Of a stretch of DNA of 64,000 nucleotides, positions 42,101-47,679 are shown piece after piece (the first letter of the stretch is position 1; every line of letters begins with the position of its first letter). The notes beneath the pieces were generated by a model. It did no database searches, was not told the origin of the DNA, and saw only the letters and a program-made list of their open reading frames with translations. The translations under genes were made by a program, and so were the position numbers. The stretch is from Oculina patagonica (Eukaryota), in NCBI RefSeq assembly GCF_052425735.1, contig NC_135760.1, positions 14,942,001 to 15,006,000 of the forward strand. Direction: 5' to 3'.

Positions 42101-45100
42101 ATGACTGTTTACAAGATAGGAAGAGGTAAGGATAAAATGCCAGAAAATGCCAGCGATTGAATTTCCAAGCCTTTAAGGGACAGTGTCATTAGAAATCTTC
42201 TAAGTTTCCGTGTACAATATTCTAGAAATACGAGGATGCACTCACTGTTAAGCAAAATAACCTCTGAACAACAAAAGAAAAGCACGAAATCATTTTCCAA
42301 GAATTTAAACAAACCGCAATCAATGGTTTTTAAGAAATTACCCTTCAAGTAAAACTGTCAAACTTGAAAACATCGGCCCGACGTTTTTAAATTTGAGGCC
42401 ACTTCTTTCCTACCAGTCTGTACCCAAACCACGTTTTAACAATTTTCAGGACTTGTAAAGTACGTTTTAGCAAGGCCAGGCCACTATAAGTGGCATGGAT
42501 TTACAATTCATACCAACACCTTCACGGGATTTTCAAATTGCACTTAATCTTGGTGATACTGCCCCTTAAAGTAAGGTATAGTTTCACGTGTGGCCGCTTA
42601 CGGGAGGTGGTCGTAATTGATTTCATTTTGTTACCAGGACGCCTTAGACCACGACCAAGAGGGAAAGTCTGGCACTACCGATATATAGGCCGGTACAAAT
42701 CTCTCACACCAAAGCGCTTGGGTCGGTTTGTTGGAAGAGTGAGGGGAACTAAGAAAGTGTTTAAATGTGCGCGCCGTGCTAAGAAGATGGGTTATCGGGC
42801 GTTCGCTTTGCGTAACCGAGGAGACTGCTACGTGTCAAGGTATTCTTCAACTTACTCCACCAAGAAGCGGTTGTTTGGACGTTTCAAAGGAACTTCTGGT
42901 CAACCACGTGCCATCGATGCTTATGTGATCGGAAAGGGTAAGAGATTATAGCAACGCTGAGTCTGGTAGCGAGAGCAAATGCCATTGTTAGCAAACCTTT
43001 GTTGAGCACTCTAAGGGTTTTCTATCCCGTTATCTAATTCGAAAGAAGCGCGAGCACTCACGAAGACTTTAGTTACCTCAACATGGTGCGATCAGCATAC
43101 GTCATGTCGATTAGCAACATTTGGTGACAAAAACCGCAGACTCAGTGAATTCGCGGCCTCAACTAGTACATACTCCCTAGTCTGCAAAGTGGGTACATTC
43201 GGGATGAAAATAAATTGACAGATGCAAGGTTACAACAGACAAGAAATAATCTGTAATGCTTCGTCAAGAACGACGACTGTTCTGTTTTGCTGGTTTGTTT
43301 TGTGGGTTTTTTTAAATCGTTCAACTCAAATGTTTTCACAGTCATTGTGCACAAAAAGGCGAGCGCAGTTGCATATTTTAATTAATATTAAAACAACTTT
43401 AGTGTCCACGTGGGTAGAAATTCGTGAATTGTGCTTAACACTCAACCCAGACATTGCCGTATTGAATCGCTTAATTAAACTTCCATTGTTTGTTCTTTCT
43501 TTTAAATTGATTTCAGGTCGTTTCAAGCCTCCCCCCAGACCTCGTAAAGGAGGCTCTGTTTGGCATTACCGTTGGCTAGGGCGTTACCGATCACTAAAAG
43601 CGCGCGGCCTGGGAAGGAAGTTAGGCCGAGTGTCAGGACGAAAGAAAGTATATAGCTGTGCTTTGCTGGCAAAACGCATGGGTTACAAAGCGTTCGCTTT
43701 GCGTCAGCGAGGGATCTGTTATGGCACTCGTTCATCTAGAGCTTACACATCCAAACCAGTCATCAAGGGCCGCTTTAGGGCCGGCGCGGGGGGACGGCGC
43801 TTCATTGATGCTTATGTAATAGGACACGGTATGTCGTGTAGGAATGTTCTCTGGATTATAAAAATCTCAAAGAAACAAACAGTTAAAAAAGAATGTTGTG
43901 GAACACCTCCAATTTAAACTTGCTAATATATGTTGGCGTTCTTTGAAATGGATATTTGCGTGTCTAAATTATAAAAATTGATGATTGTGTTATTCTGACT
44001 TTGATCATTTATTACCGGAACACATTCATACGACGCTGTTATTAATTTATTCCTACGGTTTTGTTTCATTCCAGGTCATTACAGACGGCCAATAAGAAAA
44101 GGCAAGTACTATATTTTTTTAAGGCGAACTTTGAATCAGATTGTTTTTCCTTTTCTAAAGATTTCAGATATTTCATCAATCGCAGACTTTTTGCAGAGGT
44201 TTTGCGCCTTTAATAGCCGAGCTACTACTATGAAACTTTAAACAAAGCGAATCCCAGTTTGTTGACCTATAGATTTAGCTAAACCAGAATTAACGTCAAC
44301 TTCAAATGCAGTCCGGTTCTGTTCTTGATCTTTAATTCAAGTATTTTATTAATCTTAGATTAAAAAGGGATCAAAACCTTTGTGAACCCTTAAACCCGAA
44401 TGATTATAATTGCACACGGGCAATTATTGTACGCCAGTAATTACCTTGGACAGCAGAGATACGCAAAGAAATACGCGCGCACAGTGTCCAGTGGGAGTTT
44501 GGGAGATTGGGGACCACATATGCTGATTTAATCTTTTATAATAAAATTTGGCTTACTTACCTTTTTGCAGGAGTTAGAGGTCGCTCAAGGAAAGCAAAAC
44601 AGCGAAGACGAAGAAAGCAAATAAGAAAGAATAGAAGAAAGATCAGAAGAATCAAAAGAAAGAGAGCACGAATAGCAAAAACACGAAAAATTAAAAGAAG
44701 GATAAATAGACGGATACGGCGACTGAGAGGACTGAGAAGAAAAGCTAGGAGAGCTGCTATACGAGCCAGGCGTCTGAGACGATTGGGAAAAATTAGACGA
44801 CTGCGGCTGGCAAGGAAAGCGAAACTGGCTTTGGCCAGGAGAATACGGCAGATGAAAAGGAGAATCCGGGCACGCAAGTTACGACTAAGGCGACGATTAC
44901 AACGAATGCGCGCAGCAAAACTGCGAGCTAGAATGCGACGAGCGAGGAGAAGAGCCATGCGCTTGTTGAAATTGAGAATGAGGCGGCGCATGCAAAGACT
45001 GCGACTATTGGCGCAAAAGAGGAGGGCCCGTGCACTGAAAATGGCCAGGTTAGCGCGTTTGAGGCGGTATCGAAAGCTAGCCAGGTTACGAGCAAGACAG

Positions 45101-47679: not shown

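What the first reader, a model, noticed from the sequence alone, without database searches (positions are those of the whole stretch)
44571..45602. 344-aa non-repetitive Arg-rich domain (~37% R, ~46% R+K, no acidic residues, no Pro) inside an ECM-type protein
Seen: a single in-frame exon with net charge near +157 by hand count. The other residues are mostly L/A/M/I/Q, and the DNA is not a tandem repeat. Known: such composition is typical of protamines, and Lys/Arg-rich regions occur in the flatworm adhesive Mlig-ap1. Inference: a long cationic helix or coiled coil that needs a polyanion partner (sulfated glycans, poly-gamma-glutamate of cnidae, acidic skeletal proteins, or the protein's own poly-Asp). 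It also contains many potential convertase sites.
Basis: partly seen in the sequence, partly recalled or inferred. Interest (0 to 1): 0.82.

Follow-up and report, generated by a model that had tools for sequence, protein, structure and literature searches.

The report
Conserved arginine-rich helical domain, coral protein
A coral gene for a giant secreted protein holds a real, transcribed and conserved 344-codon exon that is 37% arginine with no acidic residues; it is predicted to form long positively charged helices that probably grip negatively charged partners, and no matching family is known.

Summary
Exon 44571-45602 (+) is a 1032-nt phase 1-1 exon. Its 343 full codons have 127 Arg, 30 Lys, no Asp, Glu or Pro, net charge +157, and the DNA is not a tandem repeat.

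The exon is coding and in use:
- Spliced RNA contigs from three coral species join it to its neighbours at exactly these borders.
- 14 of 18 listed between-species differences are synonymous.
- More distant coral homologues (41-50% identity) align over about 300-340 residues without a gap. Which positions are basic or hydrophobic is conserved.
- The same neighbours flank it there: a cationic two-cysteine module upstream and a Laminin_G_3 domain downstream.

AlphaFold2 predicts three long helices (pLDDT 88). Conservation shows a 3.6-residue period. Over the whole domain the hydrophobic residues have no heptad or 3.6 period and the hydrophobic moment equals that of shuffles, so a coiled coil is not supported. 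Furin-type sites are fewer than composition predicts, and only 2 of 12 are conserved.

A likely first exon upstream encodes a signal peptide and an acidic stretch. Everything after the acidic N-terminus is cationic.

My best reading is a structured polycationic rod that binds polyanions. That function is inferred, not shown. Pfam, PDB and the protein Atlas give no match. It is a new variant of the polycationic regions known in secreted adhesive and matrix proteins.

The parts
43517..43828 (+). Exon for the last hyper-cationic two-cysteine (WSC-like) module. It is spliced downstream to the micro-exon.
   Evidence: GT..AG joints 42936>43516 and 43827>44074 in RNA contigs of 3 species. The frame is continuous. 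No Pfam hit. 73% identical to the module on L002.
44075..44101 (+). 27-nt micro-exon (..HYRRPIRKG..) between the module array and the Arg-rich exon. A GC-AG intron follows it (44102-44570).
   Evidence: 26-27 contig letters lie between the two joints in X2, X6, X9 and X16. Junction sequences. In frame.
44571..45602 (+). The Arg-rich exon: 1032 nt, phase 1-1, 343 full codons, net charge +157.
   Evidence: Joints into it (44099+2 > 44569+2) and out of it (45600+2 > 45958+2) in RNA contigs of 3 species. 14 synonymous against 4 non-synonymous differences. Gapless homologues.
44573..45160 (+). Residues 1-196, the most cationic part (19-22 Arg per 49 residues). Predicted helices 5-71 and 74-256, with a break at Gly72-Lys73.
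   Evidence: Composition by block. AF2 secondary structure.
45161..45601 (+). Residues 197-343. Less Arg, more Tyr, Phe, Trp, Met and Val. This is the best conserved and most confidently predicted part. It is probably an antiparallel two-helix hairpin that turns at Tyr-Asn-Arg 257-259.
   Evidence: pLDDT 91-95 for residues 211-310. The invariant residues L237, L244, S248, M251, Y253, Y254, R258 and L266 cluster here. Foldseek aligns 197-340 to helical hairpins, none significant. 7 of 8 heptad a/d positions are hydrophobic in the 28-residue windows starting at 224-233.
45960..46034 (+). 75-nt Lys-rich linker exon. It tolerates a 9-nt in-frame insertion in two related species.
   Evidence: Joints and the insertion behind 45994. 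Translation.
46304..46495 (+). Exon for the N-terminal part of the C-terminal globular region.
   Evidence: Joints. Frame.
46827..47306 (+). Exon for a Laminin_G_3 (concanavalin A-like) domain.
   Evidence: Pfam PF13385, E 3.5e-12. 65% identical to the domain downstream of the homologue on L002.
47639..47706 (+). 68-nt exon that holds the stop codon TAA at 47677-47679. The protein ends 13 residues after the Laminin_G_3 domain.
   Evidence: Joints 47304>47637 and 47704>48036 in all four runs. Translation.

Best explanation
The exon encodes a structured, lineage-restricted polycationic domain near the C-terminus of a giant secreted coral protein.

Shown:
- The exon is transcribed and spliced in frame in three species.
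- It is under purifying selection.
- Its length and its pattern of basic and hydrophobic positions are conserved in more distant corals.

Predicted:
- About 200 residues form a uniformly cationic alpha-helical rod.
- A further 145 residues or so form a two-helix hairpin richer in aromatic residues.

Inferred:
- In seawater the rod works as a multivalent electrostatic clamp. Its roughly 157 guanidinium and ammonium groups are spread evenly along and around the helix. They would bind a polyanion and so tie the protein into a cohesive matrix or condensate.
- Candidate polyanions are sulfated glycans of mucus or matrix, acidic matrix proteins, or the protein's own acidic N-terminal region.
- The flanking cationic modules and the Laminin_G_3 domain would supply further binding.
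For: Expression and splicing:
- Contigs of runs X2 (organism A), X6 and X9 (organism B) and X16 (organism D) skip the introns at GT..AG borders. Depth is zero in most introns. The contigs join the micro-exon to 44571 and join 45602 to 45960.
- The reading frame runs unbroken from the cationic modules through the exon into the Laminin_G_3 domain and on to the stop.

Selection:
- 14 of the 18 listed between-species differences in the exon are synonymous, although only 25% of sites are synonymous.
- Contig pieces of organisms B and D lie on the exon without gaps. The neighbouring linker exon carries a 9-nt insertion.

Deeper conservation:
- The library of 1.84 billion representative proteins gives four hits, and two word-index searches add a fifth. 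All are ORF calls on coral-type contigs, at 41-50% identity.
- BLASTP with composition correction gives 42% identity over 301 residues with 0 gaps, E 2e-37. Between two homologues it gives 50% over 287 residues with 0 gaps.
- 71 positions are basic in all three long sequences (17 expected). 92 positions are hydrophobic in all three (22 expected). The pattern of identical positions peaks at period 3.6, above 99% of shuffles.
- The cationic module lies upstream on L002 and L004, the Laminin_G_3 domain lies downstream on L002 and L003, and the splice borders are conserved.

Structure:
- AF2 on the 5-sequence alignment gives helices 5-71, 74-256 and 260-342, mean pLDDT 87.9.

Charge layout:
- Runs of basic residues are rarer than in shuffles ([KR]x4: 3 against 14.4 +/- 4.7; [KR][KR]: 56 against 71 +/- 4.4).
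- The mean hydrophobic moment equals that of shuffles. The charge is therefore spread evenly, not on one face.

Context:
- A likely first exon 1.5-2.6 kb upstream of the window encodes a signal-peptide-like N-terminus and an acidic stretch.
- The acidic N-terminal exons carry roughly -90 net charge. Every later domain is cationic, and this exon is the extreme at +0.46 per residue.

Analogy:
- The K/R regions of the flatworm adhesive Mlig-ap1 are proposed to act cohesively, and heparin blocks attachment (PMC6410801).
Against: - No binding partner, tissue or cell type is known.
- Whether the acidic N-terminal exons belong to the same transcript as this exon was not shown. RNA evidence covers only 42.4-48.3 kb of the window.
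- AF2 readily predicts helices for sequences rich in R, L, A, M and Q. The pTM is only 0.40.
- A +157 helix may be disordered without counter-ions.
- The domain evolves faster (42% identity) than its globular neighbours (65-73%).
- Two of the distant copies look damaged. L004 has an in-frame TAA near codon 10. L005 has several stops.
- Contigs cannot exclude a minor isoform that skips the exon.
Confidence: 0.55

Rival explanations
1. Rigid spacer or molecular ruler. The domain's job is length, not binding. The charge keeps a 30-50 nm helical rod extended and soluble. The rod sets a fixed distance between the array of cationic modules and the C-terminal Laminin_G_3 domain.
For: The alignments are gapless at 41-50% identity, so length is strictly conserved. 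The adjacent linker exon accepts a 9-nt insertion even between close species. AF2 predicts very long helices, one of 183 residues.
Against: Known isolated stable helices (ER/K single alpha-helices) rely on alternating acidic and basic residues. This domain has no acidic residue. A spacer does not explain why the whole protein after the N-terminus is cationic. It also does not explain why particular Arg positions are conserved.
Confidence: 0.15
2. Packaging or neutralising domain. Inside secretory vesicles or cnidocysts it condenses a stored polyanion into a compact, inert granule. The polyanion could be the protein's own acidic N-terminus, sulfated mucin or poly-gamma-glutamate. The granule swells or sets on release.
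For: The protein has blocks of opposite charge: an acidic N-terminal region of about -90 against cationic later domains. Protamine-like charge density is the classic solution for compaction.
Against: No cell-type or organelle information exists. The positive charge of the later domains (several hundred) far exceeds the negative charge of the N-terminus. That the acidic exons are on the same transcript is not shown.
Confidence: 0.12
3. Precursor of cationic peptides. Convertases cut the domain at RX[KR]R and dibasic sites into Arg-rich antimicrobial or signalling peptides.
For: 12 RX[KR]R motifs and 56 dibasic pairs are present. The protein has a likely signal peptide.
Against: The motifs are fewer than composition predicts (12 against 20.9 +/- 3.7). 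Only 2 are conserved in three homologues. There is no repeated peptide-plus-spacer unit. Conservation is spread along the whole domain with helical periodicity and is not focused on cleavage sites.
Confidence: 0.06
4. Homo-oligomeric coiled coil. Two or three chains zip together through heptad repeats.
For: Heptad a/d occupancy is slightly above shuffles on average (4.32 against 3.88 +/- 0.15). One segment, the 28-residue windows starting at residues 224-233, has 7 of 8 positions hydrophobic. An Ile stripe is visible in the first 55 residues or so (read by eye).
Against: Over the whole domain the hydrophobic residues have no peak at 3.5-3.6 residues, and the mean hydrophobic moment equals shuffles. 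+157 per chain would strongly oppose parallel pairing. The heptad-like segment is explained by the intramolecular hairpin of the AF2 model.
Confidence: 0.07

Closest known systems
K/R-rich regions of the flatworm temporary-adhesion protein Mlig-ap1 (Macrostomum lignano; PMC6410801)
   Same: Both are extremely cationic regions inside a very large secreted protein that also carries lectin-type and von Willebrand-type modules. In Mlig-ap1 a cohesive, polyanion-sensitive role is proposed. Trypsin-based proteomics is hindered there, as it would be here.
   Different: The Mlig-ap1 regions total more than 3,600 residues. Their paper speaks of lysine and arginine repeats, and the published antigen peptide contains Pro and Ser. 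The coral domain is 343 residues, non-repetitive, Pro-free, dominated by Arg, predicted helical and conserved position by position. No sequence similarity was found.
Protamines and sperm nuclear basic proteins
   Same: Arg content of a third or more with almost no acidic residues. The function rests on neutralising a polyanion.
   Different: From general knowledge, protamines are short, nuclear, lack a signal peptide and are rich in Ser, Pro or Cys. This domain is 343 residues, lies in a secreted modular protein and is rich in Leu, Ala, Met and Gln. No Pfam protamine family matches.
ER/K single alpha-helix (SAH) domains
   Same: Very long predicted isolated helices that could serve as rods or spacers.
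   Different: From general knowledge, SAH stability comes from i to i+4 Glu-Lys/Arg salt bridges. This domain has 0 Glu and 0 Asp. A helix here would need external anions.
Polycation/polyanion pairs of biological cements and mineral matrices (sandcastle-worm cement proteins; basic mollusc shell-matrix proteins such as Pif80 or Lys-rich matrix proteins). Recalled from general knowledge, not checked here.
   Same: Secreted marine proteins in which blocks of opposite charge are thought to drive condensation or matrix assembly. Von Willebrand A domains occur in some of them.
   Different: There is no homology. Those proteins are mostly repetitive or disordered and Lys-rich. No evidence was found that this coral protein is in the skeleton (no peptide match in the supplements of PMC4890752).

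Membership tests
Protamine / sperm nuclear basic protein | Sequence match to a protamine family profile | tested here: not met
   No Pfam family at E <= 0.01. No PDB sequence at E <= 1.
Protamine / sperm nuclear basic protein | Small nuclear protein not embedded in a secreted multidomain protein | tested here: not met
   The exon is spliced in frame between extracellular-type modules. A likely signal peptide lies upstream.
Coiled coil | Heptad (3.5-residue) periodicity of hydrophobic residues over the domain | tested here: not met
   There is no peak at 3.4-3.8 residues (0.38 against a shuffle 95% level of 1.06). The mean hydrophobic moment equals shuffles. Only the 28-residue windows starting at 224-233 are heptad-like.
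Coiled coil | Self-association | tested here: inconclusive
   The homodimer prediction gave no verdict. That is neither evidence for nor against.
ER/K single alpha-helix | Alternating acidic and basic residues that form i to i+4 salt bridges | tested here: not met
   0 Asp and 0 Glu in 343 residues.
Mlig-ap1-type K/R region | Repetitive K/R-rich sequence | tested here: not met
   No tandem or dispersed repeats of note. The sequence is Pro-free.
Mlig-ap1-type K/R region | Sequence homology | tested here: not met
   Only five coral-type homologues turned up in the protein libraries, and none comes from an annotated protein.
Mlig-ap1-type K/R region | Polyanion-sensitive cohesive function in a secreted adhesive | not testable with these tools
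   This needs localisation and binding assays.
Convertase-processed peptide precursor | Conserved RX[KR]R or dibasic cleavage sites that bracket repeated peptide units | tested here: not met
   12 sites against 20.9 +/- 3.7 expected. Only 2 are conserved in three sequences. There is no repeat unit.

The most novel reading that the evidence does not exclude
The protein is a built-in block polyampholyte. A secreted acidic N-terminal region and a structured +157 helical rod, with its cationic neighbours, drive self-coacervation. The coacervate would be an adhesive or mineral-templating phase at seawater ionic strength. The fixed length and register of the Arg-rich helices would set the geometry of the polyanion they bind. 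That would be a folded, sequence-specific polycation and not a fuzzy one, a design principle not yet described for marine cements or coral matrices.
Probability: 0.15. Interest if true: 0.85.

Novelty: new variant of a known kind. Interest (0 to 1): 0.62.

Why it matters
Strongly cationic stretches in secreted proteins are usually treated as repetitive, disordered low-complexity sequence. This one is a 343-residue non-repetitive domain with protamine-like charge. It keeps its exact length, its helical register of conserved positions and its splice borders across corals, and it is clearly expressed.

If it binds polyanions as a folded rod, three things follow:
- It gives a defined, expressible module for studying how Arg-rich surfaces hold sulfated or carboxylated polymers at high salt.
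- It is a candidate player in coral mucus, adhesion, cnidocyst packaging or skeletal matrix assembly.
- It is a template for salt-tolerant biomimetic adhesives.

It also warns that tryptic proteomics will be blind to this protein region.

Tried and rejected
- **Protein language-model Atlas:** no usable hit.
- **Pfam:** nothing for the exon or for the two neighbouring cationic modules.
- **PDB sequence search with the profile:** nothing at E <= 1.
- **Foldseek against AlphaFold DB clusters:** only generic long helices and hairpins, E >= 0.16.
- **JGI metagenome scan with the alignment:** 73 pattern matches, none confirmed.
- **Second word-index protein search with the C-terminal part:** no new members.
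- **Homodimer prediction (two copies):** no verdict, score 0.00. This is not evidence either way.
- **Literature searches:** no description of such a domain under Arg-rich or polycationic coral or cnidocyst proteins. The SRA and sample accessions of the homologous contigs were not found in papers.
- **Peptide strings in coral skeleton proteome supplements:** peptides from this protein gave none in PMC4890752. No supplements are held for PMC3748352.
- **Chance open frame or non-coding purine-rich stretch:** rejected because of the spliced RNA, the excess of synonymous changes and the composition-corrected homology.
- **Antisense ORF 44557-44991:** rejected because the splice signals and joints are on the + strand.
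- **Full-length annotated orthologues:** The word-index search only sees proteins of 0.55-1.75 times the query's length, and a spliced query cannot be given by reference.
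Full report
**1. The observation**

Translating from 44571 gives stops, and so does the next frame. The frame starting at 44573 is open for 343 codons. Counts:
- R 127 (37.0%), K 30 (8.7%), R+K 45.8%.
- D 0, E 0, P 0, H 1, net charge +157.
- The rest is mainly L, A, Q, M and I.
- Arg uses all six codons (AGA 45, CGA 28, AGG 26, CGG 11, CGT 9, CGC 8).

The stretch starts after ...ttttgcag and ends before gtgagt.

TRF finds only a 12-nt x 4.2 array at 44610-44660. 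The repeat finder reports two short chance-size pairs. The DNA is therefore not repetitive. The peptide is single-copy in its own 529-Mb genome.

**2. Is it a real exon?**

Public runs of the same species (organism A) and of relatives (organisms B, C, D) hold 40-100% of the exon's 31-mers. Some of these runs are labelled 'coral metagenome'.

I laid contigs of X2 (A), X6 and X9 (B) and X16 (D) on 42400-48300. Depth is zero in most intron bins. GT..AG joints appear in all species, which shows that these runs are RNA.

The joints define these exons (junction sequences):

| Exon | Content |
|---|---|
| ..42937 | cationic module |
| 43517-43828 | last cationic two-cysteine module |
| 44075-44101 | 27-nt micro-exon, followed by a GC-AG intron |
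| 44571-45602 | Arg-rich exon |
| 45960-46034 | Lys-rich linker |
| 46304-46495 | start of the C-terminal globular region |
| 46827-47306 | Laminin_G_3 domain |
| 47639-47706 | holds the stop codon |
| 48038-.. | untranslated |

Spliced together, one frame stays open from the cationic two-cysteine modules through the micro-exon and the Arg-rich exon. It continues through the Lys-rich linker and the Laminin_G_3 domain (Pfam E 3.5e-12). It ends at a TAA at 47677-47679.

No joint that skips the exon was listed. Contigs can miss rare isoforms.

**3. Selection among close species**

18 differences inside the exon were listed. Of these, 14 are synonymous and 4 are not (N20K, R92Q, M257L, W306R). Only 25% of sites are synonymous. 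That gives a rough dN/dS near 0.1.

The contig pieces of organisms B and D lie on the exon without gaps. The small linker exon next door carries a 9-nt in-frame insertion in B and D. Nucleotide divergence of the exon is 1.6-4.4%, similar to the neighbouring exons at 3.4-5.0% (table 8).

**4. Deeper conservation**

HMMER against 1.84 billion representative proteins gives four hits. Two word-index searches add one more. All five are ORF calls on short contigs. P0001 and P0002 come from Logan assemblies. P0003-P0005 come from ENA assemblies; the contig that carries P0003 is from a TARA sample. Proteins of the window's own genome and its near relatives appear to be withheld from these tools.

Identity is 41-50%, and the multiple alignment needs no internal gap over about 340 columns. 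BLASTP with compositional adjustment gives:
- 42% identity over 301 residues, 0 gaps, E 2e-37.
- 50% identity over 287 residues, 0 gaps, between two homologues.

Across the three long sequences:
- 71 positions are basic in all three (17 expected).
- 92 positions are hydrophobic in all three (22 expected).
- 88 positions are identical. Their spacing has its strongest period at 3.6 residues, above the 99th percentile of shuffles.

The homologues keep a high net charge (+0.32 to +0.37 per residue). They have fewer Arg, more Lys and a handful of acidic residues. This species is therefore the extreme.

The gene neighbourhood is conserved:
- A cationic module lies upstream (73% identical).
- Laminin_G_3 lies downstream (65% identical).
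- The acceptor lies just before G-[VF]-R-G-R, and the phase-1 donor is conserved.

The domain evolves faster than its globular neighbours but behaves like a folded unit.

Two distant copies look damaged. L004 has an in-frame TAA near codon 10 of the exon. L005 is broken by several stops and shows Arg replaced by Cys, His or Trp. These may be pseudogene copies or assembly errors.

**5. Structure**

AF2 with the five-sequence alignment predicts helices 5-71, 74-256 and 260-342. Mean pLDDT is 87.9 and pTM 0.40. The highest confidence (91-95) is at residues 211-310.

The invariant residues L237, L244, S248, M251, Y253, Y254, R258 and L266 surround the predicted turn at 257-259. Foldseek aligns residues 197-340 to helical hairpins, but no match is significant. 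I infer from this that the C-terminal third is an antiparallel two-helix hairpin with an aromatic and aliphatic seam.

Over the whole domain the hydrophobic residues show no 3.5-3.6 periodicity. The mean helical hydrophobic moment equals that of shuffles. The N-terminal 200 residues or so are therefore a uniformly charged helix without a hydrophobic stripe. That argues against a long coiled coil. A homodimer prediction gave no verdict and is not used.

**6. Charge layout and convertase sites**

Basic residues are spread more evenly than chance:

| Pattern | Observed | Shuffles |
|---|---|---|
| [KR][KR] | 56 | 71 +/- 4.4 |
| [KR]x3 | 18 | 32 +/- 5.2 |
| [KR]x4 | 3 | 14.4 +/- 4.7 |
| RX[KR]R | 12 | 20.9 +/- 3.7 |

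Only 2 furin-type motifs are shared by the three long homologues. If anything, such sites are avoided.

**7. The protein around it**

In the 8 kb upstream of the window, one ORF begins with a signal-peptide-like hydrophobic N-terminus followed by a long acidic stretch. The acidic, poly-Asp-containing exon that runs into the window's first 584 bases follows it.

Net charge by exon:
- The acidic N-terminal exons carry about -90.
- Every later block is positive, at +0.08 to +0.31 per residue. These blocks are the von Willebrand A domains, the (Gly-Gly-Pro)n blocks, nine Laminin_G_3 domains upstream of the exon plus the C-terminal one, and the cationic modules.
- The Arg-rich exon is the peak at +0.46 per residue.

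That all these exons form one transcript is plausible but not shown, because RNA evidence covers only 42.4-48.3 kb. The stop at 47677 suggests that the SUEL-lectin exons further downstream (Pfam) belong to another gene.

**8. Mechanism**

Shown: the exon is expressed, conserved and part of a secreted-type modular protein.

Predicted: a long helical rod plus a hairpin.

Inferred: at seawater ionic strength an evenly charged Arg-rich helix is plausible, and it offers about 157 cationic groups for multivalent binding of a polyanion. The most likely role is cohesion or condensation with sulfated glycans, acidic matrix proteins or the protein's own acidic end.

The closest functional analogue is the K/R regions of the flatworm adhesive Mlig-ap1. 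There heparin blocks attachment, and the K/R regions defeat tryptic proteomics (PMC6410801).

The rivals are a pure spacer or ruler, a packaging domain, a peptide precursor and a coiled coil. They are weighed in their own sections of this report.

**9. Novelty**

Pfam, PDB and the Atlas give no match. No paper describing such a domain was found. The only homologues are unannotated ORF calls.

I file it as a new variant of a known kind, the polycationic regions of secreted adhesive and matrix proteins. It stands apart by being non-repetitive, Pro-free, conserved position by position and predicted to be folded.

Noticed in passing
window 44075-44570: A 27-nt micro-exon (44075-44101) is followed by an intron with a GC donor (GCAAGT...AG). 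RNA contigs of all four runs use it.
   Followed up: partly
window 44429-44527: A dispersed repeat of about 98 bp lies in the intron just upstream of the Arg-rich exon. It has at least 387 candidate copies in the genome at 87-94% identity. It explains the RNA depth spike and the many loose ends in bin 44370-44566.
   Followed up: partly
window 45994: Organisms B and D carry a 9-nt in-frame insertion (CCTTCAACG or CCTTTAACG) in the Lys-rich linker exon. The 1032-nt Arg-rich exon shows no listed indel.
   Followed up: no
window 45223-45406: Run X2 (labelled as the window's own species) holds a second, lower-depth contig with 11 differences. All 10 of its differences that one search lists match the variants of organism D. 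This may be a divergent haplotype, a hybrid or introgressed individual, or a mixed sample.
   Followed up: no
L007 5409-6533 (G000:C3:14939409-14940533, about 1.5-2.6 kb upstream of the window): This ORF starts with a signal-peptide-like hydrophobic N-terminus followed by a long Asp-, Glu-, Ser- and Asn-rich acidic stretch. It is the likely first exon of the same gene.
   Followed up: partly
window 47677-47679: A TAA stop lies 27 nt before the end of a 68-nt exon, so the transcript has at least one intron in its 3' untranslated region. The SUEL-lectin exons at 51-62 kb therefore probably belong to a separate gene.
   Followed up: partly
L005 4197-4900; L004 1670-1710: Two distant homologous copies look damaged. 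The L005 contig (from a TARA sample) has several stops and Arg replaced by Cys, His or Trp, a CpG-decay pattern. L004 has an in-frame TAA where the window has Gln near codon 10.
   Followed up: partly
L002 1068-1430: In this more distant coral a different cationic two-cysteine module sits directly upstream of the Arg-rich exon. It is most like the window's module at 38655-38873. A short in-frame intron separates it from the exon and there is no micro-exon, so the module order differs between lineages.
   Followed up: no
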